Origin: Mantamonas sphyraenae STR306
Lineage: Eukaryota; Protista; CRuMs
Assembly: GCA_026936335.1 (NCBI GenBank)
Contig: JAPMXV010000042.1
Location: 248,001 to 312,000, forward strand
DNA length: 64,000 nucleotides
Reading direction: 5' to 3'
Below the pieces are notes generated by a model, which was not told the DNA's origin, did no database searches, and saw only the letters and a program-made list of their open reading frames with translations. Below are positions 18,792 through 61,671 of the stretch, in pieces. The number at the start of each line of letters is the position of its first letter. Position 1 is the stretch's first letter. A program made the translations under genes and the position numbers.

Positions 18792-18828
<37 letters not shown>

Positions 18829-18870
18829 GCGGGCTGCCGAGCGGTGGTCCGAGCTGCTGCGAACAAACAT
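17496..18870 (-). CDS. TOMM40: Mitochondrial import channel Tom40; exons ~18870(or 18783)-18522 and 18295-17496
   Basis: LPNPG motif, then YGGAKARMTT...FSVTHSLHL, EYFGSDFS, YMQSVTRELAAG and a C-terminal beta-signal YNFGIGMTINE. Intron GTAAGT...CACAG (18521-18296) restores the frame. Confidence 0.85.
18791..18825. repeat. (CTG/CAG)n microsatellite, about 11 units (poly-Ser if the upstream TOM40 start is used)
   Basis: Direct reading of the sequence. Confidence 0.9.
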
Positions 18871-19059
18871 TTCGACGGGGGTGGCTCCCACCGCGCATGA
18901 CGATGGCGATCACAAAGGAGGAACAGCGAACGTGTGGCTGTGAGGTATGTTTTGGACGCACATCACCCAACAACACAGCACACTCGTCCTGTCCAACGCA
19001 GCCGTTGCGGCGAGCCGGAGCGCGGACGCTGTGCGCCACCTGCCCCAGATCAAACCACA

Positions 19060-21270: not shown

Positions 21271-24200
21271 ATGACCGTACGCAACGTACTCTCATCCTCC
21301 AACACACACGCTTCGCTGCGACACACGCTGCTTCCGCGCGCCCTCCTTGTGCTCCTTGTGCTCACATGGGCCGCTTCCAGCGCCGTCGCAGCCTCCAATT
21401 CGACAAATTTCGCGCCTGCGCTCACGGGACTCCCCGCCAGCATTGCTGTCTCCGAGGACGTCACCTACCCGTTTGGCGCCCTTCACACCGTCACTGCCGT
21501 TGACGTAGAAGCAAACAGCGCCGTGGATGCTCTCGAGTTTCGCATCCGCTCCAACGCTGGCAACCTGCAGATCACAACTTCGGGCTTGTCCTTCTACGCA
21601 GGCAGTTCCTCGCCCAGCCAGGACTTGCACTTTAACGCCACCCTCAACGTCTTCAACGCACGCATCGGGTCGCTCTCCTTTGTGCCTCCTGCAGGCGTCA
21701 ACTCCGGTGCCGCTGTCCTCAACTTCACCGTCACCGACCATGCACGCGGCTTTGCCAGCGTCAACGGCTCCGCCGTCCCTGCGTCCAACTCGTCCTCGTA
21801 CGCCGTGCTCCTCTCTTACACACCCATCAACGACCCCATCGTGTTCCAGAGCACCCCCCCTGCCAGCTTTTCCGTGGCCGAGGACTCTTCGCACACCCTC
21901 GCCGCAGCACTCGTCATCTCCGACCCAGATGCAGGCGCTAGCCTCATTGGTGTCCACATGAGTGTCTCCAACGGCAAGGTTGCTGTCAGCAGCACCACGG
22001 GACTCATCTTTGCAAGCGGCTACGGCGACAACTCGACCAGCGTGCGCTTCAACGCCACCGTCACCAACGCCAACGCCGCCCTCGCCGCCGTCCGCTACTT
22101 TCCCAACACAAACTACGACGGCGCAGATACCCTGGCCATCCAGGCTTTCGACTATGGCGCCACCGGTGCAGGCAGCCCCACAAGCGCTTCCTTCAACATC
22201 GCCATCACCGTCGCAATCGTCAACGATCCTGTCTTTATCTTCCAGCTGCCCGACCAGCCCGTGCCGGTCAACTCGCTGGACCCTATGCCCCTGGGCACCC
22301 TCCAGATCACAGACATTGACGCCTACGCCTATCCCATGGATCTGTACCTCAGCGTCGCCAACGGCAAGCTGACCTTTGGCACCACCTCTGGCCTCGCCAT
22401 CAACGGCTCCACGTCCAACACCGCCAACATTGCCGTCCAGGGCACACGCACAAACCTCAACGCTGCCCTTGCCTCCCTCAGTTACACTGCAAACACAGGC
22501 TACCTTGGCCCGGACAACCTCGTCGTCACTGTGTACGACAAGGGCAGTGGAGGAGGCCAGCACCAAAGCATCAGCCACCAGGTCACTGTGGCCCTCAACG
22601 TGCGTGAGCAGCCCGTGAGCATCTGGTGGACCGGCGCCGCAGACACCAGCTGGCAGAACGCCAACAACTGGATGCCTGTCCGCCTGCCCACAAGCACTGA
22701 CTTTGTCGGCTTCAACTTCACCACTCCGCTCACCATCAGCTCCTCGTCGGCCGTCACCATCCGCAAGTTTGAGACGTCCAACCAATCTCTGGTGATCCAT
22801 CTGACCAGCGGCGCCTTTACCCTCACCAGGCCCATGACCGTGTTCAACAACACCCAGTTCCTGATCAATGGCGGCAGCACGCTCACCACAAGTGGCGACG
22901 GACAGCTCACCGTCTACGGCACCATCAACCTCAACGGTGGCACAGCCTCGGGCAACTTTCTCATGCAGCCCGGCTCCTTGCTCGTGAACACCGCCGGCTC
23001 CTCGGCCTACTACTCGTCTGGCTCTTCGGACCTGTACCGCTTCACCATTGTGTCTGGCATCATGCAGTTCCTCTCGGGAACAACCATGAGCGTCTACGAC
23101 ACCTTCCTGTGGACCGACGGCACCCTGCAGCGCTACGGCGGCAGCACGACGCCCAACATTCTCATCAAACCCGGCGCCACCCTGAGCATGCCCTCGGGTG
23201 CCACCGCACGTGTGCTCACCTACGGTCACATCAGCGTCGAGCAGGGTGCACACCTTGATTGGCAGCTCGCAGCCAACACTGGCCTCACCTGCAACTACGG
23301 TAACACCATTGACGTCCACGGTACCATGAACATCACGGTTGCCGACGCCTCGGGCGCCTCCGTCACCGCCATTGCACACACCACAAGCTCCGTGTGTAGC
23401 CTGCGTCCCATGGCCACCGGTGAACTCAACGTCCTGGCCAACTACGACGCACGCGTCGTGATGGACGTGTCCCTTTCCACAACCGCTGGGTGCAAGATTG
23501 GCACGCAAAACGCCTATCTCAGGAACGACCAGACCTGGAGCTGGTATTGCGACCCGTCCGACGTCGGTGCAGCCAATCTCGACCTCATCGGCACCGTCAA
23601 CTGGTACCGCAACAACCTGAACCACGTCATCCTGCCTGCGAGCTCTCAGATTCAGATGCTCACCAACGTGGCCGGCCACATCAACAAGCTGGACATCACC
23701 GGTGGCACAGCTCGCCTCGGCTCCGGCGCCGCGAAAACTGCCAGCAACGTGACTTTTTCCTCGGGTACCCTCACCATGGGTGGCGCTAGCGCGACCTTTG
23801 CCGTCCAGGGCTACATGGATTGGTCGGGTGGTGCCCTCAATGAGGACGCTTCAAGTGGAATCTTCCAGATCACAGGCACCTGCGAGCTCACGGGCAACGC
23901 CAATATCGCACTCACCAGCGCGCGCATGGATATCTATGGCCTCATGCTGTGGAACCGCACTGCAGGATCCTCCATGCAGCTCAATAGCAACAACATTTAC
24001 CTGCAGAGCGCTGGCGTCTGGCGCTTCCTGACTGCTGGCGACATCACACGTGTCGGCGGCACCCCGACCCTGTATCAGTACGGAAAGATGTACTTTGAGC
24101 TCCCGTCCGACACCGACCAGTTCAAGCTCGGGTTTTACTTTCCGAGCATTGGCACTGGCAGTCACGGCGACACCTACCAGTACAGCGGTCAGATTGTCTA

Positions 24201-27200
24201 CGGTCACGCAGGTTTCGGCTACGGCTACCTCAGTGGCCGCTACTACATCGAAAACAACGTCAGCATCGCGTTCGACCAGACCAACAGCTGGTACTACATC
24301 TACTCCCTGCAGCCGTTTGACCGGTGGGAACAAGTGCACACCACCACGTACATTCGCTTCTACAGCGCCCACACGTATCTGAATGCCGTCATCCGAGGCA
24401 ACGTGCGCTTGGAGGTCGACAATGTTCATTTCAAGGACGTGCACTTTGTGGCCGGTTCCGTGGTTCACGTGCAGTGCACCAGCTCCGCCAGCATCCTAGG
24501 CAACTTCCTGTGGGAATCGGGCTCATGGTATGGACCTTGCACAAACGCAGCCACCACATTCATGCGGATCTACGGCAACATGACCCTCCAGGGCGCCGGA
24601 ACAAAGAACACATACTACTTGGACATGTACGTGGAAAACGGCGGCCGCCTCGAGAGCACCGTCACCTCTTCAGGCTACCTGCAGTCCAACAGCGGCTACG
24701 GACGCCTGCGTGTCCAAGCGGGTGGATACCTCAAGATCACCCCCACGGCCAACTCGTTGTACGGTCTGCGCTGGACCGGATCCGGCTCCGACTTTCCTCT
24801 GGAGAACTACGGTCACGTCGCCATTGATCTCACAACCTACACCGACTTGGTCATGGAGATGACCAGCACCTTTTACACGGGCTCCACGTTTGAGATCATC
24901 GACCCAGTCGGCGGTCGCCAGGTGCGCTTCACTCGCGTCGCCACGCACAACTCGGGGGCCACCTACAGCATCGCCAACAACGACACCATTGCTGCCTACT
25001 CCACCACAAACTACCATTACATCAGCAGCGACCACGAACTGCGTTCCCTGGGTGGCGACATGTACCTGTATGGCAGCAATACGAACCACCGGTACCTCAA
25101 TTTGCAGTCTGGTGGCCTGCGCATGTACGGTGTCGATGTCACTTGCGAGACCCTGCGCCAGTACCAAGGCCATCTGTATGTTCAAAACACCAAGCGTTTC
25201 TACGTGGACACCTTCCTGCCGCAGCAGACCAGCACCTACGAGATCAACGGCTTGTCCACAACGAACCCGGGTGAACTGTACATCCGCAAGAAGTTTGACT
25301 TCAGCCTGGTCACGTACACGTACACCAGCCTCAACTACGTGCAGCTCATCTTTGAGAGTGGTTCCGTGCTCGACTTCACCTATGCTTCCACTTCCCAATT
25401 GTTGTTCCGCTTGGCCAACAACGGCCGCATCCGCTTCCTCAGCGGCTCTCTCGGCAACTTTAGGCGCACAGCAAACTTCAACGCGCTCCACTACGTCACC
25501 ACTTCTTGGAGCGGCTCCTACTACATCACACAGGAAAGTGGCGCGCTTTGGGAACTCGAATCGATTGGCAACGAGAACAGTGGCTACTTGTTCTCGGCCA
25601 CCCAGATGGACATCTACGGTACCATTACCTACACCAAGAGCTCCCTGGGTCTGATGGGTTCCACGGTTATCCTGCAGTCCGGAAGCAACCTCACCGAAGG
25701 CGCAACAGCACGCATTTACCTCGGTGGTAGTGTCTACGCCCGCGGCCAGGAGAGCTTCAACAACATCTACACCGCTGGGGGCCAGTTCCGCGTCGACACC
25801 AAGACCATCTCGGTGAACGACTTTACCATGACCGGCAACCACTACATCTACACGACAGCCCCCCACAAGCTGTTGGTGGACACAATGCACGCCCAGTATG
25901 GACGCATCTACGCCAGCGGTTCTCCGGTGACGTCGTCGTTCAACACTGGCTGCACGAGTTGACCCAGTACCTGTACATGTACGTGCCCATCTACATTGCG
26001 CAGACGTATCGCTACGTGTCACAGACCTCTTCCTACTACATGCACATCTCTTCCTACCAGTTCACCATCATGGAGAATGCTACTCTGTTGTGGGAGGACA
26101 ACAATGTCGCTTTCCCCGGCACAAACTCGTACGCATGCGCACACTCAAACTTTTTTGAGATCTACGGCAACGTTACCGTCAACCTGCAGAACACGGCCAA
26201 TCGCGTCCGCTTTGCATGCCCAACCAGGATGCACAAGGGCTCCACCTACACCGTCATCCAAGGCGAGGCCTACTACGAGAACGCCAACTACTGGCACACC
26301 GATCCAGTGGTGTACAATCCCTCGACAGAGAACCGCATCCTCATCGCCAGCTCCATGTATGTGCAGACAAACCTCACGGGCTACTTCTACACCCAGAGCA
26401 GCATGTACATTGGTACGCCGGCCAACGCCGAGGCAGACCTGTACCCGATCTCCGTGTCCAACATCGAGAACATCGGTAACTTTGAGATCTACCGCAACGT
26501 TACCATGAACAACATCCAGTGGAGGTACGGCAACGCTCTGTTCCGTGTGGGCACCGACGGCGACCCGTCTGTGCTCACGCTGGTCAACGCGACCATCTCC
26601 CACGACAGCACTGTGACCTCCCAGGCGGTTGCCGTCGGCCAGATCCATCTGTACGGTACCACCACCATGAGCGGTACCAATGTCTGGAACAACTACGGCG
26701 TCCAGATTTACAACTATGGCGTTGTCGACAGCTCCGTGTACAGCAACGGCATGCGATCATTGCTCTACAACGACCGCATTGCAAACATCCACAATGAGCC
26801 TGGTGCCACCTGGAACATTGTTCCGCCCAGTCTCAGCTACAGCTACGGATACTTGTGGACCATCGACGCCTCTTCGTCCCGTCCCTACTTCTTCAACCGT
26901 GGAACACTCATCATCGCTCCCACAGTCTCTGGTGTCCTCAGGTGGTATCGCTCGGGCATCTACAACTACGAGAGTGGCACAGTGGAGATGAGGAGCCAGA
27001 CTGGTGTGGAGCTCCTCAGCGAGGCCAACTTTGTCCAGCTTGGAGGTTCGTGGACCAGCCCGCCCAACGGAGGCACCTTGGGCACCATCAATGTGGAAAA
27101 CACCTGCTACATGCGCGTGCACACATCGATTGAGTCCCCCATCCACGTCAAGGCTGGAGGCTTTATGGCTGTCGAGAACGGCATGCCAGCTGCCACGGTC

Positions 27201-30200
27201 AATGTCTCATCCCTTGAGTTGACCAGTGGTACTTGGCGCACGTGGCGCAACGTCACATTCGGCACCGTCACCGTTCGTGGTGCTGACCAATTCCACATCG
27301 AGAACACCGGAGCCGTGGCTGCGGGAAGCACAAGGACGCGCGTGGACATCGGCTACATCACGTACACCTTGACCAGCGGCCATTCCAACATCTTTTGCCA
27401 GGGTAGTTCGGGCTACGACTGTGAGATCCATTTCCTCAATCAGGCCCACTTTTCAGCGGCATCCAACCTCGTCTTTGCGTACGGTGCGCATCTGGTAAAC
27501 GACGGTGACATGGTCTTCACCAACCCTGCTGGTGGCCTTGTGCTCCTTCCGTACACAGACAAGGGTTCCTTGTTGGACAACTCGGTAAACGGAACCATCC
27601 GCATCATCCCGACGACCACCACCTACTCCGGCAGCGAAGGAGTGTTCCGCGGCACATCTGGAACCTTCCAAGTGCGCAACTATGGACACATCCTCGTCCA
27701 GCCGGCCAACAACGGCACCGTGCCCATGCGTGGCGTTGCTCTGAACAACTTTGCTTCGGGCACCGTCCAGATCCTTGGTGGAACCCTGGATCTGTACAGT
27801 GGCGGAAACAACTACGGCACCATCATCAGCGTCGGCGGGACAACTTTGCAGATCTCAGCTGGTCTCTTTAGCGTCTATGCCTGGCAGGACGCCGTGCCCC
27901 GCGTGAACGGTGGCACCATCGACTTTACCGGCACGGGACTGGACATCAACCGCGTCGACTTTACGGCGGGTGAGCTGTTCACGTCGGGACAGGTGATCCT
28001 GCGCAATGTGGTCGCCGTGGCCGGTGTCGTTCAGATGCCCAGTGGCCTGTCCATTGTCTCGTTTGAGGTTGATGGAGCCGCGGTACAAGTCACCAGCACG
28101 CAGTACATCGAAACGCTGGTGCTCAGCAGTGGTACGTTCACGATTGAGGGCAACCACACGGTGAATGTCACCCACCTCGTCCTGAAGAACGGCCAAGTGA
28201 ACGCAGACATCTCAGCGGGCGCCTACATCACCTCTCCGGACGTGTCCATCACCAACACGGGCAATTTGACGCTGAACGGCACTCTGCTTGAGGCCACCGC
28301 GAGTCTGGTCTACAACAAGCTTGGGGACAGCCTCCGCCTGCAGAACAATGCCGTTGTGCGTGTGAACAGCACCTGCACGGCCCTCTTTGGCTACGACGGA
28401 GCCACCAACGTGTCTGCCCCGGGACATCCGGTCGGCGACATGCGCATTCAGAGTGATCTGTCGTCTACCATCCAGGTGATGGGTGTAGTGAAGGTCAATG
28501 CCTCGTCTTCCAACGCGGTGTACATGGAGGCCAACCTGAACTTGGATCGCAACGCGTTCCTGGATGTCCAGCGTGGAGAGCTGCGCTTGGCTCTGGGTTC
28601 CCAGTTCAACGGCACTGTCACCTTGCCTGCATCCACCGCTCAGGGCGCCCTCATCTATTGGACGGGTTTCAACCACCACATCGACACGGTTCTCAGCACC
28701 CTGCTGGTCCGTGGTGGTATTGCGACTCTTTCGCCGGCTCTGCACCTGCCTCATGTCGACATCACCGCCGGGTCCGTCTCCACCGCCGCCACGGGCACCA
28801 ATGTCATCGACGCCCTTACGGTTCATGGAGGCAACGTCCAAGTACAACAGAATGCTGCACTCCATGTGTCCACGATGAACTGGGTCGGTGGCTCCCTCTC
28901 CCAGGATCGCCTCAACATCAGTGCACGACAAGCCGGGGCCAGCCAGTCTTCTGTTCTCACCGTCACCGACTTGTTGTCCATGCCATCTTCCGGTGTGCTT
29001 CGACGCATGTCGGCCGTGCGTGTGGTGGCCAACAAGACAATCGCCTTTGACGTGGCGAACGACGAATTGCACCAATACGCCGGTGCGATCTTGGAGCTCC
29101 CGGCACATGCAACCATGAACCTGACATCTCAGTCGGCAAGCACAACACCTGCTGTGCTCCCCATGGGCAGTCAACCCGTCGACGCATCCAACTACCTTTT
29201 GGAGGATGCCACGGTTCGCTCGCATGGTGTCTTCTACGACGCCGACACTTGTGTTCCGGCGTCGTCATGTGGCCTTCTCCTCAATGGACAGGTCACCGTG
29301 CGCACCGCTTCGCCCCATGCGGCCAGCAACGTCACTGTCAAGAGCCACGTGCTGTCGCAGGTGGGCTCCACCACAGTGGAGTCTGGATCACTCCGCCTTA
29401 TTGGTTCGTCTGAGTTCCAGGTCACCAGTGGTGGTGTGGTCAGTGCCAATACTGTCGACCCTATGCCCGCGCCCTTGCGCATCGACAGTGGTTCGCATGT
29501 TGTTGCGGCTGCAGTCTCGTTCGCCCGTGTGCACACCTCCAACGTGGAGATTGTGGACGGAGCCACCGTCCAGTACATCGAGGCCAACAATGGTGCCGTG
29601 GTGACTGTCAACTGCCCCGGCGGTTGCACCGTCCACAACCTTGTGGTCAACGCTGGTGGTCAGGTTTTCATCAAGACCGACGATGTCAAGAACTTGTACG
29701 TCCGCAACGGTGTCCTCAACGTCACGGCGGACCTTGTCCTGGACCACATGTCCATGTGGGATGGTACCACGCGCATCAACCCGGGTGCCCAGATCACCGT
29801 CACCGACGCCAACATCCAGGGTGGTCACATCCTCGGTGCGCCGGCCAACGGCTCTGATCCATGCCCGGCCCAGGATGCTGTCTATGGCAAGCTGCGTTTG
29901 GCGTCGACCTCTGCGTTGGTGTCCAACATCACAGGTGTGCTTGTGGAATCGGCCACCATCGAGAACCTGGGTGTGATGCACCTTGGTTCTCGCGGTCTGC
30001 TCACCCTCAAGTGTGCGGCCACGATCCAGAACAACGCCAACGCCACGGTGGTGGTTACCCAACAGGCTGACTCTGTGCCTGTGCTCGTCACCTCGGCACT
30101 GGGTTACACGGGAGACAACGCACGCATTGTCAACTACGGTACGATGCGTGTCAACGCAACCGCAGTGCCCGCAGCAACAGTCACCGTGGATGCGCCGTTT

Positions 30201-51200: not shown

Positions 51201-54200
51201 CAACTGCCAGTGCCAACACGACTGTGTGTTCGTGGGTGTCGTCCAACATCACTGTGATGAGCAATGCCACCGCCCAAATGGTATGCAACGAGTCTCAGGT
51301 TTGTATGCCGGCCAACGCCACTATGGTGTGCGCTTGGAACGCTACCCTCAACGCTTCGCAGTGTGCCATGGCGGACAGTTCGCTTGTTTGCAACAACGTG
51401 ACCACTTGCGTGCCTGTGGTTGGACCGATGGTCTCCCACAACATCACGGTGTGGCAGTATGTGTGCTTGCAGAACAACACGAACAACACGGCTCAGGCCG
51501 AGCAGCCAGCTGCGCCTGTCAACCCTCTGTACACGCCTGTGCGTCGCGACTTGACTCTGCGTGGTACGGTGACAGACTTGAACGTGGCCATCTCGCGCAT
51601 CTTGTATGTGCCTGACGCGAACTACTACGGCGTGGACCGTTTGGATGTGTCCGTGTCCGATTTGGGCAACTCGGGCGTCGGTCAGCCGCTGCAGGACGCC
51701 AAGTATGTTGATTTGAACGTGACGTGGGTCAACGACGCTCCTGTGTTGGCCGACACGTCCATGTTCAGTTCGTTGCGCAAGCTCAAGGAGGAGATTCCTT
51801 CGCTCATCGAAGGAATCACTCTGACTGACGTGGACTCGTCGTTCTCCAACATGACGATGAACATCACGGTGGCGCACGGTTACATCTCGTTCAATTTCAC
51901 GGTACTGCTGAACCGCACGCTTGTGTCTGTGGACAACAGCAGTGCTATGGTGTTCAACACCACGGGCAACATTACCGTGGGTGGTTTCGATATGCCCAAG
52001 GCCGATCTGGTACGTGTTGCATCGCAGTACGCCAACTACGGGCGCCCGCGCACGTACGGCCGTGGCTTTTCGCTGCGAGCTCCTCTGTTGGACCTGCAGA
52101 TCATGCTCTCTGTGCTGCAATACCAGCCTTTCTGGCCGTACCACGGCGCCGACAACATGACCATCTTTGTTCATGACGAGGGCTATCGCGGCCATGGTGG
52201 TGTCCTGTCGGACACGCTGCACCTTCCCATGACGGTACTGTGGTGCGACGGCAACATCACGTCGGGTCTTATCAAGGACAGCTGTTTTGTGTGTGGTGGC
52301 CACAACGCCACGTGCATCGGTTGCGACAACGTGCCCTGGAGCGGACTGGTCTACGACGCGTGCGGTGTCTGCAACGGAGACAACAGCACATGCAAGGGTT
52401 GTGATGGTGTCCCCAACTCGGGCAAGGTGTACGACGTGTGCGGTGTTTGCGGTGGCCCCGGTCGCGATCAGTGCAACGTGTGTGGTGGAGATGACAGCAC
52501 GTGCAAGGGTTGCGATGGTATCCCCAACTCGGGTCTCAAGTACGACGTGTGTGGCGCTTGCGGTGGCGACAACTCGACGTGCAGGGGTTGCGATGGTATC
52601 CCCAACTCGGGCAAGACCAACGACGTGTGCGGTATTTGCGGAGGCAACGGCTTCACGTGCATTGGTTGTGATGGTGTGCCAAACTCTGGCAAGATCTACG
52701 ACACGTGCGGTGTTTGCGGTGGCAACACCGACTGCACCGGTTGCGATGGCAAGGGTGGTGCCTACGATGGCTGCGGTGTCTGCAACGGCGACAACAGCAC
52801 TTGTGCCGGTTGTGATGGCCAGCCGTTTTCGGGCAAGAAGTATGATCCGTGTGGTGTGTGTGGAGGCGACGGTACGTCGTGCGCAGGTTGTGACGGCGTG
52901 CCCAACTCTGGCAAGAAGTTTGACCAGTGCTTGGTGTGTGACGGTGACAACAGCACGTGTCCTTTCATCACCTCCATCTATCCGAACAGTGGTCTGGTGG
53001 CCGGTGGCGAGACGGTCACGGTGTACGGCCGCAACTTCCGAAACGATGCCCTGTTGCGCTGCCGCTTTGGTAGCACGCTTGTTGCGGCGCAGTACCGAAT
53101 TTTGCTGCCCAGCAATGTGGGTGTGATTTTGTGTCCGACGCCGCCTTCGCCTGTGAACGCGCCCAACGGTGTGGGCTACGTTTCTTTGGAAATCACTGTG
53201 TTCAAGAGCATCTTTACGCAGAACGGCTACGACTTTGGCTACCACCAGCCCCCTCCTGTGGTGGTGCAGTCGCGCATGCGCAATGATGCTGCGTCGATCA
53301 CGGTCACGTTCGACAAGGACACGAACCGTGCCAACTTTGTTGGTTACAAGTCTTGCGACACTCTGTTCAAGCCTACCACGCTGGCGCTGATGGGAGTCAA
53401 CCCCGTGTGCTACTTTGAGAGTGCAACATCGCTGGTGGCATTGCTGCAGGCGGGTACGGTGTTGGATCCTGGCATGATTGTGGAGGTGCAGAACAACTCG
53501 ATTCGTCGCCTGGATGCCCAGTCCAGCGATTCGCGCCTGTATGCCCCTGCGCGCGGATCCGCTCCGGTGCTGTATCCGCTGAATCCCATCCGGCCGGTAG
53601 CTGTCATCAGTGCGCCGCCTGTCATTGGATACTGTGATGGCGTCACGCTGACCACGGCTGCATCGTACGGATCCGGTGCGCGCAACATGCGCTACACATG
53701 GAACGTGACGGCGGTGGGCAACAGTGCCAATACGGCCTATCTCAACTCGATCACTGCTCTGCGCACAGAGTTGGCATCGCGTGGCAACACGCAGTCGACC
53801 CTGACTGTGGCGTCCAGCTTCATCGTGCCGGGCTTTACGTACGAATTTGCGCTGGTGGTGACAAACTTCCTCAACGTCACGGGAGATGCCACGACCAAGC
53901 AGGTTACCAAGGACGTGCTGCCGCTGCCTTCGGTGTCCATCCAGGGTAGCACGCAAATTGACTTTTTGCGTCCGCAGTGGAATGTCATCGAGGCCACGGG
54001 CTCGTTGTCTGTCTGTTCGGTGGAGCGCACACTGGCCTTCCAGTGGGTGCAGCTGTCCGGTCCTACGATTCTGGACAAGGCCGCTACGACCACAGAGCGT
54101 CGTTTGTACTTCCCTCCAGATGTTCTCGCGGTTGGCGAGAAGTACTCGTTCCGCGTGACCGGTACGGTGACAGAAAACCCAACCCTGTTTGCCGCGGCCA

Positions 54201-57200
54201 TTGCCAACGTCACCGTGCAGCCTTCGCCGCTGAGTGCGGTGCTGGTGGGTGGCCTCGAGCGCACAGTGTCGCGAATCCAGACAGTTGTGCTGGATGCGAG
54301 TCAGAGTGCCGATCCGGACAAGAGCAACACCACGGCGACGTTCACGTGGACGTGCATCCAAGTGAAGGACAATCAGGCGTGCCGCAACACGTCTGGCTAT
54401 CTTCTGCAGCTGCTGCCCCAAGCAGTCCTGACTTTCCCGGCCAACTACTTGAAGGCCAACGTGACCTACCGCTTCGGAGTCACCTTCAGCAAGGATGGAC
54501 GCCAGAGCTCCGCTCAGCAGACGGTCAAGGTGCTCAGTGGTGATGAGCCTGTTGTGTCCATTCAGCCGCTGCCTGCGAACCAGCTGCCCATCAACCCGAA
54601 CCGGGAGATTGTGTTGCATGCGGTTGCGGAGTCGAGCACGAACGACACCTTGGAGTACAGTTGGGCGATTGTGGATGGTGACATCTCCATCAACCAGGCT
54701 GTGAGCGGCAAGCCGATCTACAAGGACCTTGTGATCCGCCCCAACGCCCTGACGGGTGGTGCGTTGTACACGTTTGTCGTGACAGTGCGCGACGGCAACG
54801 GACAGGGTACATCGCTTATTCAGCTGCGCGTGAACGAGGCGCCTCGTGCGGGTACGTGTACACTGTCGCCGGCTGAGGGTATTTCGTTGACCACCGAGTT
54901 TACGATCTCGTGTCAAGGCTGGGTGGATGTGGTGGCTGATTTGCCCATCCGCTATGCGTTCCAGTATTCCATCGACGGCGTGTACTACCGTCTGAACACG
55001 GTGTCGCTGTCCAACTCGCTCAAGTTTACGCTGCCTGCACCTGCAGTGAACTCGACCATGCGCATGCATGCATCGGTGCAGGACGCGTTTTCGGCGGCGA
55101 CGGAAGTGACTTTGCCGATTACGGTGCGTCAGCCGCAGTCGACGCAGGCTGTGAAGCAGAGCATCCAAGAGGTGGTGCAGACGCAGATCCCGAACGCACA
55201 GAACGTGTCAGACACCGAGAACGTGTTGAAGCTGGCCTCAGTGGTGGCCGTACAGCTGAACTCGGTTGGTACGACCGAATTCACGCGTCAGGAGAAGACA
55301 CAACTGCGCGAAGTGGTCCTGGATTCGCTGAAGGAGGTGAACAACCGCACGGTGGCAGTGAGTACCAGCACTGTGGCCGAGACGCTGAATGCTGTGGAAC
55401 TGGTGGTTGCTGAGCCGAACGAGGTCAACGAGCAGCTCCTGACAAAGACAATGACGCTGGTGGACCAGTTGGTTTCCAAGGCCATCACGGAAACCGGCGT
55501 GGATGTGTCTGTGCTCGAGGGTTTCTACGGCGTGTACTCGGACATCATGGCCGCAGACGAGAATGCCATCCAAAAGACGCCGGGCACGCAGTCCGTGGCC
55601 ATGTCCAACGCCCAGAACATGGAATTCATGAAGAACGTGGAGAAGCTGACGGCCAAGGTGATGGAGAGCATGCAGTGTGGCCAGGGTGACGTGTCTGTTG
55701 GTAAGACCTACTTCCAGCAGGTGCTGCGCAAGGGCTACCACGGCGATATCGCCGGGTCGCGCGTGAGCACGCCTGTGGCTGTGAAGCCGCAGTTCAAGTT
55801 CCTGCCCGAGTATGACTTCCCCACCGACCTGTTCAGTTCTGCCAACCCGATCCTGAACGCTGCGCCGTCGTGTGTCAACCTTGTGATGCAGGGTATGGCC
55901 AAGGCCCCGCAGTACCAGAACAACGACACAATCGAGTTTGGCGTCTCCATGGTGTCGCAGATCTCGCTGCGCACGCTGAACCAGTCGAGCATCTCCGTGT
56001 CGGGTCTGAAGACGCCGTTCAACATTCGCCTGCCCATCGACCGTATCCGTGCGCGCGCCAAGCGTACCAACTCGCTTGAAGTGGCGTGTCAGTACTTTGA
56101 CAATGAGGCTGACCGTTGGAGTGGCCGTGGCATGACGCCTGTTTCGTTCACGTACGATGACATCCGTTGCGCCAGTGCGCATATGACCGACTTTTCGGTG
56201 CTGATGCGCCCGACGGTCCCGTGTCCGGACGATTGCAACTTCCGCGGTCTGTGCAACAACGGCACATGCTTCTGCACGAACGACTGGCTGGGTACGACGT
56301 GCGACATCCCGCCGCCGCCCAAGGCGCGTTCAGTGCGTTTCGACAACAGTGGTGCACGTATCCAGATGGTGTTTGACCGCGCCACCAACCGAATGGGCAA
56401 GGAAGGCAGCAGCGACTGCAACGACTTTTTCCTGGCCAACAGCAGTGCACTGCTGCAGGGTGCCACGTGTGTGTTTGCAGACGACTTTACGCTGCTGATC
56501 ACGCTCACGTCTCAGTCGGCCATCAAACCAGGCGATTGGCTCAACTTGATTCCTTATCGCCTGAATGGTGCGCCCGAAAGCGAGGTGCGTTTCAACAACG
56601 ATGGCTACCCCGTGGCTCTGGCCGAGAAGCCGCTGGTGCCCGTGTCTGTGCTCACCATGCCCAACGAAATCGGAAACTGTGACGCGGTGACGCTCGACGC
56701 AACGCTGTCACAGGGTTCTGGTTCACGCCCGCTTGAGTTTTTCTGGAGTGTATCGCCCACGGGTCTGAGCACCGCTGCGTACAACCAGGTGGCGGCCAAG
56801 CTGCAAAACTTCCGCGGTCCCGTGGTCACCTTTGGGGCCAACGAGATGGAGCCTGGCTTCCGCTACCGCTTCACGCTGGTGTCCAAGAACTTCCTGGGTT
56901 TGGAATCGCCAGCACTGACGCGTGAGCTGTTCAAGTCGTCGTTTGCCATCCCGACCATTCTGATCGAGGGTCAGACGACGCGTGAGGTGCCGCGCCCGCG
57001 TTCCGTGACGGTGCGTGCCGCTGCACGTCTGTCGGCGTGTGCCAGTTCCAAGGAGCTTGACTTTACATGGGCGTTTGCCGCAGGCTCGCCCACGTTTACG
57101 CTCAACGCTCAGACCAAGAACACGCGTGCGCTGTTCATTCCGGCCAACACGATGGATGTGGGCAGGACGTACGTGCTGGAAGTGACGGGCTGCATGCCGA

Positions 57201-60200
57201 CCACGACCACCCCGCTGTGTGGTACGGCCACCGTGCGCCTTGTGGTGCCGGCAAGTCCTGTGGAGGCGCGCATCTTTGGTGGTGGTGCCTCGGTGGGTGT
57301 GGCGGACGCTCTGGTGCTGGACGGCAGCATTTCATTGGATCCGGATGATTTGCAGAACGTGACGCCATTCAAGTACTTGTGGCGCTGCGAGTTTGAGACG
57401 ACGCCGACTGTGTTTGAGGGTGTGACGACGCGCAACTTTTTGCCGTGCACAAACCTGAACACAAAGACGCTGTTGACGAGCACGCAGGCACAGATGGTGA
57501 TTCCTGCGGGTGCTTTGAGTGCCAATGAGAAGCTGAACCTGGACAAGAACGTGTACACGTTCAAGCTGACGGTGGAGAAGGGTGGACGCGAGTCGAACGC
57601 GACCACCAAGATCACCGTGTTGCCTGGTTCGCTGCCGATTGTGCAGGTGAAGCCGCAAGCGAGCAGGAAGCACAACCCGAACGACAAGTTGAACCTGGAG
57701 GTGGAGATTGCCAACGAGCGCCCGTCGACGACGTACGACTACACGTGGCGTGTGATCCCCAACGACCAGCTCAATGTGTCCAACCCGAACGTGGTGGCCA
57801 CAAGCGTCAAGAACAAGAACTTTGTGATTCGAGCCAACCGACTTTCGCCGGGTGCCTCGTACACATTTGAGGTTCGTGTGTTGGACGTGCTCAGTGGCAC
57901 GCAGGGTAGCTCGCGAGTGACGATTCTGGTCAACTCGCCGCCCACGGCCGGTGGCTGTTCGGTGACGCCGACCACCGGTACGCAGCTGCAGACCAAGTTC
58001 CAGGTCAGCAGTTCGGGCTGGGTGGACGATCCCGACGATATGCCGCTGCAGTACTCCTTCCGCTACGTGGATGGCAACGGAGCCGAGGTGGCCATGTCGC
58101 CGTTCAGTGAAGCCAACAAGGCTGAGACGGTGTTGCCCGAAGGTTTGGGCACGAACAAGGTCCTGGAGCTGCGTTGCTACGTGTCTGACTTCTTTGGCGG
58201 TCAGGCATTCAGCACAACGCAGGTGACGGTGGAGCCCATCAAGATTGACGCCGGTGGCGATGTGGCCGACGTGGCCGACTCGTTCGTCAACGGAGGCATG
58301 GCCGATGCCCTGTCCAGTGGTGACACGGCCGCGGCAGGTCAGTACATCAACTCGATTTCGTCGCTGCTGAACGCTCCTGCGGAAGAGCCGGCCAATGGCG
58401 GTGGTGGCGGCGGCGGCGGCGGAAACCCGCAGCCCAAGCCGACGCCGACGGCAGAAGAGACGGCGAAGAAGGAGGCAGTGCGCGAAAAGTTGCTGGGAGC
58501 CCTGGATTCTGTGTTGGCGTCGACGGTGTTGACGAGCAACGAGGATGTGGAGCGCAACAGCAAGAGTGTGTCGCTTGTGTTGTCATCGACGACCCTTACG
58601 GCCAAGGCGCAAACCGACGGTGCGGGCCTGGTCAAGTCGCTTGTGACGGCCACCGAGTCGACGGGTCTGGGCAAGTCTGGCGACAGCATGCTGAGCACCA
58701 TCGACAACATTGTGGTGTCGTCGCCGATTGGCAAGTCGGCAGCACCGGGTGCCAGCACGGCCGAGTCGGGCAAGGATCTGTCGCAGGACTTGCAAGGCAC
58801 GGTGAGCCGCCTGTCGGATTCGTCGCTGGGCGACAAGGTGTGTGGTGAGGAGCCGTTTGCGCTGGGTTCGAGCAACCTTGCGCTGCAGTCGCGCAAGCAG
58901 TTCCCGGACAAGGTGGGAGGCAGCGCGGTGTCACCGGCAGCCAAGGGCAAGACGGGTGCGCAGGTGCCGTCGTTTGGACTGCCCACGGGTCTGTTTGGCA
59001 GCAACGCGCCGGCTTGCATGGACTCGCATGGCAAGGCGCAGGAGCGCAACCCGTTCTCGTTCGATCCGGAGTCGTCCAAGGTGCAGTCGCCCGTGACGGG
59101 TCTGACCTTCAAGAACGGCAAGGTGGTGCAGGCTGTGTTTGGCCTGGACACACCGATCGACATTTTCATTCCGCGCCAAGACCCGAACGGCTTCTACGCG
59201 GCACTGAACAACCCGAATGCAACCGTGCCCAGCAACTTCACGCTGCCTCGCGCGTCGTGCGAGTATTGGAATGAGGAGCTGGAGGTGTGGTCGGACGACG
59301 GTTGCAAGGTGAAGAACAACTGGCTGAATGGCACGCTGTGTGCATGCACACATCTTACAGACTTTGCCTCGCTGGCCGCGGACTCTGCGCCGACGGTGAA
59401 CGTGGTGGATCCTGTGGGAGACGCCAAGCTGCTGGCAGGACTGGCGGACAACCCGTTCTCGGCCATTGTGCTGGGCATTGTGACGGGTCTCTTCCTGATC
59501 CTGGTGTTCCTGGGCTGGAGGCAGGACAAGATCGAGCGGGAAATGCTGCTGGGTCTGCGCCCTGTGCCGGAAAAGAGCCGCTGGCAGGCGTGGCTGGAGA
59601 AGTGCCAGAGCAAGGGACCGCAGGAGCGAAGGAAGGCGAGGCGCCGGGCTTCTTCAAGCGCTACGTGGACAGCGTGTCGAACAACTTCAAGACGAACCAC
59701 GGCTGGTACTCGATCTACGCGAGGGATCCAAAGGACCCGATCACGCGTCCCAAGTACATCACCATCCTGTTCTCGGTGATCATGTCGGAGCTGACGGTGG
59801 TGGCGCTGTTCTACTCGGATGGCGAGTCGTCGATGGGTGCCGAGTTTGTGACGGGTATTCTGGCGTCGTTGATCCTGAGTCCGCTGGGCTTTGCCATTGC
59901 GTACATGTTCAGCGCCACGCGACAGCCGCTTGACATCCAAGCGGAGCGCATCAAGGCTGGCCTGGCTCCGGCAGACACCAAGAAGGAGTTTGAGGAGCTG
60001 GAGCTGGACGAACTCGGCAACAAGAAGGCCAAGGCCGAGGTGGAAGGAGGCACGACTGTTGCGCCGAGCGGACCGAGCGGCCCGGAGGAGGTGGAAATGA
60101 GCGAATTGGGCGGCGAGGAACAGGCAGCAGCCGGTGGCAGGCGTCGCCGACGCAAGAAGGCGACAGCCGAGAACGAGGATGGCGAAGAGGAGGATGACGA

Positions 60201-61671
60201 GGAAGGTGGCGAGGATGAGGAAGGCGAGGAAGACGGACGCAAGATGACGATGAAGGAGAAGATGATGGCGAAGTACGAGGCAAAGCAGGCAAAGATGCGT
60301 GAGGAGGAAGAGGCGGCAGCTGCGGCGGAGGCTGAGTTTAAGCCGCTGCCGGCGTGGACGGTGTCGTTTGCGTTTGCCTTCTGTCTGTTTGTGTACATCT
60401 TTAGCACGTACATGAACCTGCTGTACGGTCTGAAGTTTGAGCAGTCCACGGCAGAGGACTGGCTTGTGTCGTCGCTGACGGGCTTCCTGCAGGACGGCGC
60501 GGTGAAGGATCCGATCACGATTCTGATCAAGACGTTTGTGATCCTGTTGTTCATCACATTTGTGCTGGGCATCGACGGACGCAACGGCGGCGGCCTGGCT
60601 GTGACGAACCTGGAGCAGCTGATGGTGAACCGCATGATGGAATCGCGGGAGGAGAAGCAGCGCAAGCGTGTGGAGGCCAGGAAGAAGGCCAAGGCGGACG
60701 CAGACGAGGCGCGCAACCGCAAGTCGAACCTGAGTGTGCCCAAGGGCAACCTTGCGGCGGTTCCGGGCGACTTTGGCGGACGCAGCGAGCAGGCGAGCCG
60801 AAGGCACAAGGGAATGGTGGCGCTGGAGGAAGACAAGCCGAAGCAGCGCACCACTCGCGGTGGCGGCAAGTCGTCTGCAGAGACAGTGAGCATGGAGGAG
60901 CTGGAGCTGCAGATGATGACGCCGAAGGAAACGGCAGGCGTGCAGATGGTGGCGGACTCGCCGGCGCTGGTGGCCAGCGGAGCGGGTGTGGGTGGACATC
61001 GTGCCTCGGTGTCTGTGCACACGCCAGTGCATACACCTGCTGCACAGCGCTCTGTGGGTCCGGGTGGACGTCGTCGTGTGACTCAGGCGGCGGGCATTGG
61101 CGCAAGCAGCGCGTCGCTGGTGACGGCAAAGCCCAAGAAGCGTTTGGACGACGAGGACACATCGGACGAGTCGGATGCATCGATGAGCGGCGGAGAGGAG
61201 AGCAAGAAGACAACGACGACGACGACGACGACGACTGCGGTGCCAAACATGGCCACAGTGGTGGCTGTGAGCAAGTTCAAGTCGGCAGCAGCTCGCAACC
61301 GTCGCTCGGGCTCGGGCCGTGGCTCGGGACGTGGCGGCGGACGCGGTGCAAGCGGTGGTCGTGGTTCGGGAGGACGCGGCAGCGGCAGCCCGAGCTTGGG
61401 CCGTGGCAGCATCAGCAGCAGCAGCAGCAGCAGGTTGAGCAGGCAGGACAGTGAGAACGTTGTGATCCCGCAACTGAGTAGCATGGGCTCGTCGCCGCAG
61501 CCGCAGCGCTCGGGTGCACGCTTGCAACAGCAGCAGCCGGCCAGTCCGGGCACGCAGGCACACAACAACATCATGGCACGCAGGTCCGCAGGGCGTGGCA
61601 CGGGAAACAGGCTTAGCACGGGAGGCCGTGGAAGCTCTGGACGTGGAGGAGGCCGTGGCGGCAGCCGTTGA
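21271..61671 (+). CDS. Giant (~13,470 aa) polycystin-1-like surface adhesin/receptor, apparently intronless, broken in this sequence into ORFs 21271-25962, 25959-37442, 37439-39046, 39022-39369, 39233-59779 and 59287-61671
   Basis: There is one N-terminal signal peptide (LLVLLVLTWAASSAVAA) and the domains continue across each frame break. At ~39232 the paralogous copy (43721-43730) has one T fewer, and at ~39026 one extra C gives WPLFIGSVNDNP like the paralog WTILVASVNDNP. The C-terminus has REJ, GPS (CACTHLTDF) and PKD1-type motifs HGWYSIY...PITRPK and LLYGLKF....DWLVSS..GFLQD...DP. Confidence 0.8.
21400..22615 (+). repeat. Three N-terminal bacterial-type cadherin-like repeats (ND.P ... ED ... 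I.D.D ... N.AL..L.Y.P)
   Basis: The same motif set occurs in about 29 more copies between 33030 and 52240. Confidence 0.75.
22620..32910 (+). other. Autotransporter-passenger-like beta-solenoid region (~3,400 aa)
   Basis: Opens with WWTGAADTSWQNANNW.P.RLP...D.V, continues as G/N/T/S-rich beta repeats (W.GG.L, N.G.L.I), and ends in an autochaperone-like cap (VAYAGTLHVTY...F.P...DYFRVFT....ISGRF...YSSTYLDL). Confidence 0.6.
29586..31051 (+). repeat. Near-identical direct duplication, period 765 nt (255 aa): 29586-30286 and 30351-31051
   Basis: The protein segment NNGAVVTVNCPGG...IRSAINGT occurs twice with only a few silent nucleotide differences. Confidence 0.95.
32912..33020 (+). other. PSI-like Cys domain
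   Basis: CTLNHNCISCVNSSTNCHWTQNKCV fits the C.....C..C......C.W....C pattern. Confidence 0.6.
37439..46580 (+). repeat. Near-identical ~4.5-kb intragenic tandem duplication (37439-41938, 41939-46432, plus a partial third start 46433-46580)
   Basis: Each unit has seven cadherin-like repeats, the seventh carrying a fibrinogen-like/LamG insert. An older, diverged unit lies at about 33030-37435. Confidence 0.95.
46655..49830 (+). repeat. Four copies of a ~260-nt Cys/Asn-rich module (CQNVSTPVTTC...CTQTFVDSSNC) at about 46850, 47490, 47890 and 49530
   Basis: The protein core is identical and the DNA nearly identical; N-x-S/T sequons are dense. Confidence 0.95.
52245..52960 (+). repeat. About 9-10 tandem ~26-aa Cys repeats GCDG.PNSG..YD.CGVCGGD.STC
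   Basis: Direct reading; the motif resembles the end of the ADAMTS cysteine-rich region. Confidence 0.9.
52961..59380 (+). other. IPT/TIG - REJ(1) - GAIN/GPS(1) - EGF - REJ(2) - GAIN/GPS(2)
   Basis: IPT: ITSIYPNSG..AGGETVTVYGRNF. REJ: LDASQSADPD/LDGSISLDPD, and NEAPRAGTC..SP..G....EFTISCQGW.D / NSPPTAGGC.V.P..G. GPS1 starts at 56087 (CQYF...W...CASAHMTDF), EGF spans 56222-56302, and GPS2 starts at 59258 (CEYW...WSDDGC...CACTHLTDF). Confidence 0.85.

What the first reader, a model, noticed from the sequence alone, without database searches (positions are those of the whole stretch)
21271..61671. 40-kb, ~13,470-aa single-chain chimera: bacterial-style giant adhesin ectodomain on a polycystin-1 GPS/5-TM anchor
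Seen: six abutting same-strand ORFs with one signal peptide and continuous domain logic. The first and last ORFs share a frame, and correcting +1,+1,+1,-1,+1 nt gives 13,467 aa with no obvious introns, although most neighbouring genes are spliced. Known: VNDAP cadherin-like repeats and passenger-like beta-solenoids typify giant bacterial adhesins, whereas REJ-GPS-TM typifies eukaryotic polycystin-1 (human about 4,300 aa). Inference: a very long, cleavable surface tether or sensor (prey capture, gliding, coat or ciliary). I know no described protein with this architecture.
Basis: partly seen in the sequence, partly recalled or inferred. Interest (0 to 1): 0.9.

Follow-up and report, generated by a model that had tools for sequence, protein, structure and literature searches.

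The report
Giant polycystin-type surface adhesin gene
A deep-branching protist (almost certainly Mantamonas sphyraenae) carries one intronless gene of about 40 kb for a surface protein of about 13,466 residues, in which a huge adhesin-like stalk sits on the self-cleaving module and first five membrane helices of polycystin-1; at least two, probably three, of the five breaks in its reading frame are assembly errors.

Summary
Six abutting + strand ORFs (21271-61671) carry one signal peptide, cadherin-like repeats in four ORFs, two REJ domains, a GAIN/GPS domain with an intact HL^T site, and five TM helices.

Contigs built from sequencing reads of the same organism lack the frameshifts at 37428 and 39028. 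Evidence at 39232 is ambiguous. With those three edits, 25959-59779 is one ORF of 11,272 codons. The breaks near 25930 and 59620 were not tested with reads, but codon-phase signal, composition and family collinearity run straight through both.

The membrane anchor is homologous to polycystin-1 TM1-5: a family profile hits PDB 6a70_B at E 2.6e-27. It has no PLAT domain and no channel half. The same GAIN-5TM anchor occurs in at least four other genes of this genome, and in Rigifila, Physarum, Gefionella and Achlya.

About 3,400 N-terminal residues are orphan and beta-rich. The "beta-solenoid" reading for them is unproven.

Genome statistics match the published Mantamonas sphyraenae assembly. The scan has already flagged other giant REJ-GAIN adhesins on other DNA of this genome.

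Verdict: a real gene, a new variant of the PKD1/REJ family. An adhesion or mechanosensing function is inferred, not shown.

The parts
21271..21399 (+). Start codon and N-terminal signal peptide (aa 1-43, hydrophobic core LLPRALLVLLVLTWAASSAVAA)
   Evidence: Translation and hydropathy scan. It is the only N-terminal hydrophobic segment in the 40 kb.
21394..22737 (+). First block of cadherin-like repeats (ORF1 aa 42-489)
   Evidence: BLASTP of the pieces against each other: 25-30% identity to repeats in ORF2, ORF3 and ORF5, E down to 1e-18.
22738..32963 (+). Orphan beta-rich region of about 3,400 aa, rich in G/T/S/N/Y, that spans the first frame break
   Evidence: No Pfam or NCBIfam match. No homolog in two large protein searches. 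No paralog in the own genome. The single-sequence AF2 model is all-beta but has pLDDT 41. The nearest named atlas clusters are beta-solenoid surface proteins at 0.79-0.89, a lead only. A Tyr-rich block runs from ORF1 aa ~900 to ORF2 aa ~390.
25900..25960 (.). Frame break J1 (frame 1 to frame 0), not tested with reads
   Evidence: The GC3 phase flips here with no non-coding gap, staying at 0.8 or more on both sides.
32964..53200 (+). Stalk of cadherin-like (Cadherin_4/Big_9) repeats with inserted modules: fibrinogen-like starts (35640-35774, 40055-40186), pentraxin/LamG (about 40565-41011 and 45059-45505), Cys-rich pieces, ADAMTS_CR_3 (52199-52315) and TIG (52961-53197)
   Evidence: Pfam and the self-comparison.
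37428..37429 (.). Frame break J2: two bases in the assembly that are absent from read-derived contigs
   Evidence: read laying reports '2 left out' at 37428 in X1, X2 and X3. The contigs are anchored in unique upstream sequence; the X1 record is 6442 nt long.
37436..46429 (+). Two tandem 4.5-kb units, about 99% identical except for islands at 38336-38636 and 38936-39086. A third, diverged unit starts at 46430.
   Evidence: the repeat finder and pairwise alignment.
39028..39029 (.). Frame break J3: one base missing from the assembly
   Evidence: read laying reports 'A put in behind 39028' in X1 and X3, on a 140-nt contig specific to copy 1; X1 shows 0 other differences. Intact copy 2 has the extra base.
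39232..39232 (.). Frame break J4: an extra T in a T run (TTT here, TT in the otherwise identical copy 2)
   Evidence: Alignment A1. The only read-derived contig over this site carries copy-2 letters, so the read evidence is ambiguous.
54011..55240 (+). REJ domain 1
   Evidence: Pfam REJ and the own-genome scan, 1.8e-69.
56081..56210 (+). Internal degenerate GPS-like motif (HMT, second Cys lost), followed by an EGF-like Cys pattern
   Evidence: Local profile hit, 32 bits.
57020..58351 (+). REJ domain 2
   Evidence: Own-genome scan with PF02010, 3.4e-69.
58202..59374 (+). GAIN domain with the GPS motif. CACTHL^TDF: His 59351-59353, Leu 59354-59356, Thr 59357-59359.
   Evidence: Pfam GPS. Weak ADGRF1 GPS hits in PDB. 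The family profile hits adhesion-GPCR GAIN domains. The AF2 model of the paralog's GAIN matches BAI3 GAIN at 3.4e-10.
59441..59524 (+). TM1
   Evidence: Hydropathy 2.79. Family profile positions 7-107 map here in frame 2.
59590..59656 (.). Frame break J5 (frame 2 to frame 1) in the cytosolic TM1-TM2 linker, not tested with reads
   Evidence: GC3 phase flip. The family profile continues collinearly in the other frame. The paralog and the Rigifila proteins carry both halves in one chain.
59752..60582 (+). TM2 (59752-59820), TM3 (59839-59916), acidic cytosolic loop, TM4 (60343-60423) and TM5 (60496-60582)
   Evidence: Hydropathy. Profile hits of 87 and 62 bits. Homology to PC1 TM2-5.
60583..61671 (+). 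Low-complexity cytosolic tail (Arg/Gly/Ser-rich, with a Thr run) and the stop codon
   Evidence: Translation. No Pfam match.

Best explanation
This is one intact, intronless nuclear gene (21271-61671, + strand) of Mantamonas sphyraenae. It encodes a type-I-start membrane glycoprotein of about 13,466 residues from the PKD1/REJ family.

From the N-terminus the protein has:
- a signal peptide;
- cadherin-like repeats;
- an orphan beta-rich region of about 3,400 aa;
- a long stalk of Cadherin_4/Big_9 repeats with nested lectin-like modules (pentraxin/LamG, fibrinogen-like, TIG, Cys-rich);
- REJ, a degenerate GPS, an EGF-like pattern, then REJ;
- a GAIN domain with an HL^T autoproteolysis site;
- a five-helix bundle homologous to polycystin-1 TM1-5, without PLAT and without the channel-like TM6-11;
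- a low-complexity cytosolic tail.

The five frame breaks are indel errors of the PacBio-based assembly. This is shown for two, likely for a third, and inferred for the last two.

Inferred mechanism: the ectodomain is exported and heavily N-glycosylated. The GAIN domain cuts the chain at HL^T, but the two halves stay attached non-covalently. The filament, hundreds of nanometres long, binds substrate or prey surfaces during flagellar gliding. Pulling on it strains or sheds the N-terminal fragment and exposes the tethered stalk peptide to the 5-TM bundle, which relays the signal inward.
For: Shown:
- ORF layout, signal peptide and 5 TM helices.
- Domains.
- Shared repeat family across four ORFs.
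- Frameshifts at 37428 and 39028 are absent from copy-specific read-derived contigs of 2-3 runs.
- 39232 is an extra T relative to the identical intact copy 2.
- With those edits, 25959-59779 is one ORF of 11,272 codons with canonical repeat boundaries.
- The GC3 phase flips without any gap at J1 and J5.
- The family profile is collinear over J5.
- The uninterrupted paralog (C1, 3216 aa) has GPS-TM1-TM5 in one chain.
- Profile against PDB: Polycystin-1 6a70_B at 2.6e-27 over TM1-5, and adhesion-GPCR GAIN domains at 5e-19 and weaker.
- A profile built without PC1 scores 106 bits on fish PC1, against 1.2 bits or less for shuffles.
- The AF2 model of the paralog's GAIN+5TM has pLDDT 86.9 and matches BAI3 GAIN at 3.4e-10 and PC1 chains at rmsd 4.1-4.6 over about 170-180 columns.
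- No PLAT or PKD_channel hit.
- Flanking genes are ordinary eukaryotic housekeeping genes.

Inferred:
- Cleavage, from the intact HL^T motif and the established behaviour of GAIN domains (PMC3321182).
- The adhesion and mechanosensing role.
Against: - J1 and J5 were not checked against reads.
- The J4 read evidence comes from a contig carrying copy-2 letters.
- The organism is diploid (PMC10492846), so a broken allele beside an intact one is not excluded.
- No run is on record as RNA, so expression is not shown.
- The GAIN fold and the full 5-TM bundle were modelled on the paralog, not on the window's own broken chain.
- No functional data exist for any 5-TM-only PKD1 relative.
- Without the TM6-11 half it cannot join a PKD2 tetramer the way PC1 does, so the signalling route is speculative.
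Confidence: 0.8

Rival explanations
1. It is a recently inactivated pseudogene, or one dead allele of a diploid locus. At least some of the frame breaks are real mutations, and no full-length protein is made from this haplotype.
For: Five frame breaks in one gene. J1 and J5 lie in unique sequence, where short-read polishing should normally have worked, and they were not tested. The genome is diploid. Contigs show presence, not absence, of variants.
Against: Two breaks are contradicted by copy-specific read-derived contigs. There is not a single in-frame stop in 13,466 codons apart from those caused by the shifts. GC3 is strong in every piece. All five breaks are 1-2 nt indels, the typical PacBio consensus error. 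The assembly was polished with Pilon to correct single-base errors; that this left indels in place, and that near-identical repeats hinder short-read polishing, is my inference.
Confidence: 0.1
2. There are several adjacent genes: a secreted N-terminal protein (ORF1) and one or more separate stalk and receptor genes, rather than one chain.
For: ORF1 has its own signal peptide and ends in a stop. J1 was not tested by reads. The orphan region has no homologs that could show collinearity.
Against: ORF2 overlaps ORF1's stop by 4 nt and has no signal peptide. The coding phase signal runs through without an intergenic gap. A Tyr-rich compositional block straddles the junction. ORF1 begins with the same cadherin-like repeats as the downstream stalk. 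The other breaks have the same character, and two of them are contradicted by copy-specific read-derived contigs.
Confidence: 0.05
3. It is a structural coat or matrix protein only. The giant ectodomain is shed constitutively at the GPS to build a surface coat or extracellular filaments, and the 5-TM stub is merely a delivery anchor with no signalling role.
For: The intact HL^T site. The anchor lacks PLAT, the channel half and any recognisable cytosolic signalling domain. Many giant stalk genes exist in this genome.
Against: The 5-TM bundle has conserved motifs (HxW.S.F, FTRxQRxT, YG.KF, W..S...QD) across CRuMs, Amoebozoa, malawimonads, oomycetes and animals. That is more conservation than a passive anchor needs.
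Confidence: 0.25

Closest known systems
Polycystin-1 (PKD1; PDB 6a70, 8z6b) and the animal PKD1/REJ family, including sea urchin SpREJ1-10 (PMC1934368)
   Same: REJ domain(s), a GAIN/GPS domain with HL^T just before TM1, and a homologous TM1-5 bundle (profile E 2.6e-27; motif HLWLS..FTRxQRxT before TM2). The ectodomain is large and modular. SpREJ proteins also vary from 1 to 11 TM, and half of them lack PLAT.
   Different: No PLAT domain between TM1 and TM2. No TM6-11 channel-like half. No LRR, C-type lectin or PKD-repeat head. About three times the length of human PC1. The ectodomain is built from Cadherin_4/Big_9 repeats plus an orphan beta-rich region. It comes from a CRuMs protist, not an animal.
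GAIN-5TM proteins of other protists (Rigifila ramosa P0019 and P0031, Physarum P0016, Gefionella P0040, Achlya OQR92705.1) and paralogs in the same genome (C1:133248-142958, three on C49)
   Same: The same REJ-GPS-5TM C-terminal cassette, in which the chain ends shortly after TM5 and the heads vary. Rigifila P0019 is RCC1-TIG-REJ-GPS-5TM. The C1 paralog is Kelch-ADAMTS_CR-REJ-GPS-REJ-GPS-5TM.
   Different: Sequence identity in the anchor is only about 25-42%. None of the relatives I examined approaches 13,000 aa (the longest is 5,090 aa). None of the relatives whose domains I scanned has this stalk, although Achlya P0055, the longest, was left out of that scan as too long. As far as I could find, these relatives are unnamed hypothetical proteins.
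Adhesion GPCRs (for example latrophilin/ADGRL3, BAI3)
   Same: A GAIN domain with GPS autoproteolysis next to the membrane, a long adhesive ectodomain, and the expected tethered-peptide logic.
   Different: The membrane part is a PC1-type 5-helix bundle, not a 7TM secretin-like GPCR.
Giant bacterial adhesins with cadherin-like/Big repeats (type I-secreted RTX/Bap-like adhesins, autotransporter passengers)
   Same: Tens of Cadherin_4/Big_9-type repeats with VNDxP boundaries, nested lectin-like cargo modules and very large size. The orphan region's composition resembles beta-helical passengers (weak atlas leads).
   Different: It has a eukaryotic signal peptide, native codon usage (GC3 0.73-0.79), many Cys-rich and N-glycosylation features, and a eukaryotic REJ-GAIN-5TM anchor. 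It has no secretion signals of types I or V and no beta-barrel. There is no evidence of recent transfer.
Chlamydomonas FMG-1B, the giant flagellar membrane glycoprotein implicated in gliding (recalled from my own knowledge, not tested here)
   Same: A very large glycosylated surface protein of a flagellate that glides on its flagellum. It is a functional analogy for the proposed role.
   Different: I did not look for sequence or domain relationship, and it has a different anchor.

Membership tests
PKD1/REJ family (polycystin-1-like proteins) | REJ domain in the ectodomain | tested here: met
   Pfam PF02010 at 1.4e-142 with two copies. The own-genome scan gives 1.8e-69 and 3.4e-69 at window 54011-55240 and 57020-58351.
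PKD1/REJ family (polycystin-1-like proteins) | GPS motif within a GAIN domain immediately before TM1 | tested here: met
   Pfam GPS at 1.4e-12. CACTHLTDF lies 28 residues before TM1. The family profile hits adhesion-GPCR GAIN domains. The full GAIN fold was modelled only on the paralog.
PKD1/REJ family (polycystin-1-like proteins) | Membrane region homologous to PC1 TM1-5 | tested here: met
   Profile A5 against PDB gives 6a70_B at 2.6e-27. A profile built without PC1 scores 106 bits on Takifugu PC1 in three collinear segments, against 1.2 bits or less for shuffles. The window's own pieces score 96.6, 87.2 and 62.4 bits.
PKD1/REJ family (polycystin-1-like proteins) | PLAT/LH2 domain after TM1 | tested here: not met
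   No PF01477 hit. The TM1-TM2 linker is only about 75 residues. Only 1 of 23 relatives scanned has PLAT. Half of the sea urchin SpREJ proteins also lack it (PMC1934368).
PKD1/REJ family (polycystin-1-like proteins) | Eleven TM helices with a C-terminal PKD2-like channel half (PKD_channel) | tested here: not met
   Only five hydrophobic helices. There is no PF08016 hit in the gene, and none of the genome's at least 25 PKD_channel loci lies beside it.
Adhesion GPCR (class B2) | Seven-transmembrane secretin-like domain after the GAIN domain | tested here: not met
   Five TM helices. The profile's best PDB match for the TM part is polycystin-1, not an adhesion-GPCR 7TM. No 7tm_2 hit in Pfam.
Bacterial giant repeat adhesins / autotransporters | Cadherin_4/Big-type tandem repeats | tested here: met
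   PF17803 at 2.2e-40, 6e-18 and 1.4e-11; PF17963 and PF17892 also hit.
Bacterial giant repeat adhesins / autotransporters | Bacterial secretion and anchoring apparatus (type I signal/RTX, or type V beta-barrel) and bacterial genomic context | tested here: not met
   No such Pfam or NCBIfam hits. The gene has a eukaryotic signal peptide and a REJ-GAIN-5TM anchor. Its neighbours are eukaryotic housekeeping genes. Codon GC3 is uniform along the gene.
Beta-solenoid (passenger-like) fold for 22738-32963 | Recognisable beta-helix family match or a confident beta-helix model | tested here: inconclusive
   No family match. The AF2 single-sequence model has pLDDT 41. Atlas neighbours are beta-solenoid proteins, but at 0.79-0.89. 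Hydrophobic periodicity is weak, z 2.5-3.7 at lag 7-8.

The most novel reading that the evidence does not exclude
The GAIN domain plus the PC1-type five-helix bundle is an ancient, autonomous receptor cassette. It is present in CRuMs, Amoebozoa, malawimonads, stramenopiles and animals. Animal polycystin-1 arose when this cassette acquired PLAT and was fused to a PKD2-type channel half. In Mantamonas the cassette, still in its free form, anchors a 13,466-residue adhesive filament. Force-dependent separation of that filament at the GPS signals through the 5-TM bundle to control flagellar gliding or prey capture.
Probability: 0.2. Interest if true: 0.75.

Novelty: new variant of a known kind. Interest (0 to 1): 0.6.

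Why it matters
The role of polycystin-1's first five helices and of its GPS cleavage is still debated. Here that half of PC1 occurs naturally on its own, without PLAT and without the channel half. It is conserved across several eukaryotic supergroups and, in this genome, attached to very different and sometimes enormous ectodomains. That gives a simple natural system for asking what the GAIN-5TM unit does by itself, and it bears on how PC1 was assembled in evolution.

For Mantamonas, a family of giant surface proteins like this one is a concrete candidate for the adhesion machinery behind gliding and bacterivory.

Practically, it also flags residual indel errors in giant repeat genes of the published assembly. 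Such errors would split these genes in automatic annotation.

Tried and rejected
- Three large protein searches. The REJ/GPS part found only fish polycystin-1 at 6e-6 among proteins of 3,766-11,984 aa. The two searches on the orphan region found nothing.
- Atlas search with the paralog's TM region. It returned unnamed clusters only, which was not informative.
- Single-sequence PDB search with the paralog. It found GAIN domains but not PC1; the profile was needed for that.
- Single-sequence AlphaFold of ORF1 aa 481-1559. At pLDDT 41 it was not used for fold search.
- NCBIfam on the orphan region: nothing.
- Hydrophobic periodicity: weak and inconclusive.
- Own-genome search for paralogs of the orphan region, to bridge J1: none.
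- Read evidence at 39232. I first took it as confirmation, then rejected that, because the covering contig carries copy-2 letters at 39358, 39643 and 39655.
- Whether one of the four runs is the RNA-seq library. The paper lists one RNA run for this strain, but the runs are coded and labelled 'DNA?', so I make no claim about expression.
- Introns as the cause of the frame shifts. Rejected: the shifts are 1-2 nt, sit inside repeat units that are intact in the sister copy, and the coding phase flips without a gap.
- The joined chain was only counted locally for length and stops. It was not sent to any search or folding tool; all searches used the pieces separately.

Full report
**Observation.** The six abutting + strand ORFs are there as described: 21271-25962, 25959-37442, 37439-39046, a short piece at 39028-39232, 39233-59779 and 59287-61671. 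The frames are 1, 0, 2, 1, 2, 1. The N-terminus has a signal peptide. One hydrophobic helix follows the GPS motif in the fifth ORF and four more lie in the sixth. Pfam finds Cadherin_4/Cadherin_5/Big_9 repeats, Pentaxin/Laminin_G_3, N-terminal pieces of Fibrinogen_C, TIG, ADAMTS_CR_3, REJ (1.4e-142, two copies) and GPS. The last ORF has no Pfam match. The same cadherin-like repeat type occurs in ORF1 (aa 42-489), ORF2 (aa 2336-3818), ORF3 and ORF5. GC3 is 0.73-0.79 in the called frame of every piece.

**Are the frame breaks real?** The region 37436-46429 consists of two tandem 4.5-kb units that are about 99% identical outside two divergent islands. A third, diverged unit follows. Copy 2 is in frame throughout, so it serves as an internal reference. 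Relative to it, copy 1 lacks one base near 39028 and has one extra T (TTT against TT) at 39232.

I laid Logan contigs of four runs of the same organism on 36900-39700.
- Three runs leave out 2 nt at 37428, on contigs anchored in unique upstream sequence.
- Two runs insert an A behind 39028, on a contig specific to copy 1.
- One run leaves out 1 nt at 39232, but that contig carries copy-2 letters at three diagnostic sites. It does not settle 39232.

With these three edits, 25959-59779 becomes one ORF of 11,272 codons, and the junctions read as normal repeat boundaries (…IIAVNDAPV…, …GSVNDNPVF…).

At both sites the GC3 phase flips from one frame to the other with no non-coding gap. A Tyr-rich compositional block straddles the first break. 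A profile of the anchor family continues collinearly across the second: frame 2 up to TM1, then frame 1 from the segment before TM2.

**Organism and why the errors exist.** The assembly has 25,061,354 bases in 78 contigs at 59% GC. The published FALCON assembly of Mantamonas sphyraenae has 25.06 Mb, 78 primary contigs and 59.19% GC. It was built from PacBio RS II reads and polished with Racon and Pilon, and the organism is diploid (PMC10492846). Residual 1-2 nt indels in and next to near-identical repeats are what such a pipeline leaves behind. The flanking genes are ordinary eukaryotic housekeeping genes: Npa1/NopRA1, an Rrp8-type methyltransferase, leucyl-tRNA synthetase and p24. The locus is therefore not contamination.

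**The anchor.** A search of the genome with the TM2-5 piece found a paralog on contig 1. It is an uninterrupted 3216-aa ORF with the architecture Kelch propeller, ADAMTS_CR_3, REJ, GPS, REJ, GPS, 5 TM. An exhaustive HMMER search with its TM1-5 found 57 cluster representatives and none close (best 1.9e-10). Many of them have HLT about 30 residues before TM1 and end just after TM5. Of 23 scanned, 11 have GPS, 10 have REJ, and only one has PLAT.

Named members come from Rigifila ramosa (another CRuMs lineage, from transcripts), Physarum, Gefionella and Achlya.

Several results tie the anchor to polycystin-1:
- A profile built without any polycystin-1 scores 106 bits on Takifugu polycystin-1 in three collinear segments: GPS+TM1, TM2-3 with the HLWLS..FTRxQRxT motif, and TM4-5. 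Shuffled controls stay at or below 1.2 bits.
- The tool-built family profile hits human Polycystin-1 chains in the PDB at 2.6e-27 over its TM part. It hits adhesion-GPCR GAIN domains over its extracellular part.
- An AlphaFold model of the paralog's GAIN+5TM (pLDDT 86.9) matches BAI3 GAIN at 3.4e-10. It matches PC1 chains over about 170-180 columns at rmsd 4.1-4.6.

In PC1 the PLAT domain sits between the first two matched segments. Here that linker is short, and no PLAT or PKD_channel is found.

The cassette also occurs in three genes on contig 49. The genome has at least eight REJ genes and at least 25 PKD_channel loci, none of them adjacent to a REJ-GPS gene.

**The ectodomain.** The stalk repeats are of the Cadherin_4/Big_9 type. 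They are massively expanded in this genome, with matches on contigs 27, 28, 29, 32 and 44, including an open frame of 9,721 aa. Earlier notes of this scan describe further giant REJ-GAIN adhesins on other DNA of the same genome, with an Flc-type or a single-TM anchor. I did not test those.

The 3,400 residues between the first repeat block and the stalk have no family match, no homolog and no paralog. A single-sequence model is all-beta but unreliable. Language-model neighbours are beta-solenoid surface proteins at sub-threshold scores. 'Beta-solenoid' remains a lead.

A second, degenerate GPS-like motif (HMT) lies between the two REJ domains.

**How it probably works.** The following is shown: the export signal, a very long modular ectodomain with lectin-like inserts, an intact GAIN/GPS site next to the membrane, and a conserved PC1-type 5-helix bundle. 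The rest is inferred from the established behaviour of GAIN domains (PMC3321182) and of PKD1/REJ proteins (PMC1934368). The chain would be cut at HL^T and held together non-covalently. The filament would bind surfaces. Tension would strain or shed it and expose the stalk peptide to the 5-TM bundle. Given that Mantamonas glides on its posterior flagellum and eats bacteria, substrate adhesion or prey capture is the most likely role. This is conjecture.

**Comparison and novelty.** The protein belongs to the broad PKD1/REJ family: REJ, GAIN/GPS and homologous TM1-5 are all met. It is not an ortholog of polycystin-1, because PLAT and the channel half are not met. It is not an adhesion GPCR, because it has no 7TM. 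It is not a bacterial adhesin, because it has no bacterial secretion or anchoring features, it has native codon usage and it sits in eukaryotic context.

REJ-GPS proteins with few TM helices are described in sea urchin (PMC1934368). A REJ-GPS protein with 6-7 predicted TM helices is described in Ectocarpus (PMC4700764). I found no description of the PLAT-less 5-TM cassette as a family, nor of one carrying a stalk of more than 10,000 residues. I rate it a new variant of a known kind. Its main interest is that it exposes the GAIN-5TM half of PC1 as a free, widely distributed module.

Noticed in passing
window 37436-46429 (and 46430 onward): Two tandem 4.5-kb units are about 99% identical except for two sharply bounded divergent islands (38336-38636, 64-73% identity; 38936-39086, 78%). 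A third unit is only about 69% identical. The patchwork suggests recent duplication or gene conversion that spares short cassettes.
   Followed up: partly
window 56081-56210: An internal GPS-like motif (…CQYFDNEADRWSGRG…IRCASAHMTDFSVL) lies between the two REJ domains, with HMT instead of HLT and the second Cys replaced. It is followed by an EGF-like Cys pattern. The C1 paralog also has two GPS hits, so a duplicated REJ-GPS module seems to be a family trait.
   Followed up: partly
G000:C1:133248-142958 (L008:149-9796:-): An uninterrupted 3216-aa paralog: Kelch beta-propeller, ADAMTS_CR_3, REJ, GPS, REJ, GPS, 5 TM. It has the same anchor as the window's gene and a completely different head.
   Followed up: yes
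G000:C49:48800-52800(-), C49:73600-77600(+), C49:102300-106300(+): Three more genes carry the GPS plus PC1-type 5-TM profile. In the second, TM4-5 match in a different frame from GPS-TM3, which means either an intron or another assembly indel. The GPS hits on C4, C71 and C8 showed no 5-TM match downstream.
   Followed up: partly
G000 contigs C27:160-218 kb, C28:72-86 kb, C29:718-744 kb, C32:378-394 kb, C44:528-533 kb: At least 170 matches to the cadherin-like stalk unit. They include an open frame of 9,721 aa on C44 and a run of about 58 kb on C27 that is broken into many abutting open frames. The C27 run may be another giant gene split by the same kind of indel error.
   Followed up: no
G000, whole genome: At least 25 loci match PKD_channel (PKD2-like channels), none of them next to a REJ-GPS gene. 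That is a large polycystin-2-type channel repertoire for a 25-Mb genome.
   Followed up: no
window 49133-55168 (- strand) and other long antisense ORFs: Very long antisense ORFs lie opposite the giant gene, for example 2011 aa at 49133-55168 and 896 aa at 29388-32078. I read them as by-products of the strong GC3 bias, not as genes.
   Followed up: no
window 59917-60342 and 60583-61668: The TM3-TM4 loop is a block of about 140 residues of Glu/Asp/Lys/Arg. The C-terminal tail is Arg/Gly/Ser-rich with a run of nine Thr and repeated GRG/GSG units. No domain is recognised in either.
   Followed up: no
window 1447-20364: The upstream neighbours are ordinary nuclear genes: Npa1/NopRA1 ribosome-biogenesis protein (1447-8100, +), a Methyltransf_8 protein (8152-9489, -), a GCK-domain protein (10087-11289, -), leucyl-tRNA synthetase pieces (12663-15602, +) and p24/GOLD (18934-20361, +).
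   Followed up: partly
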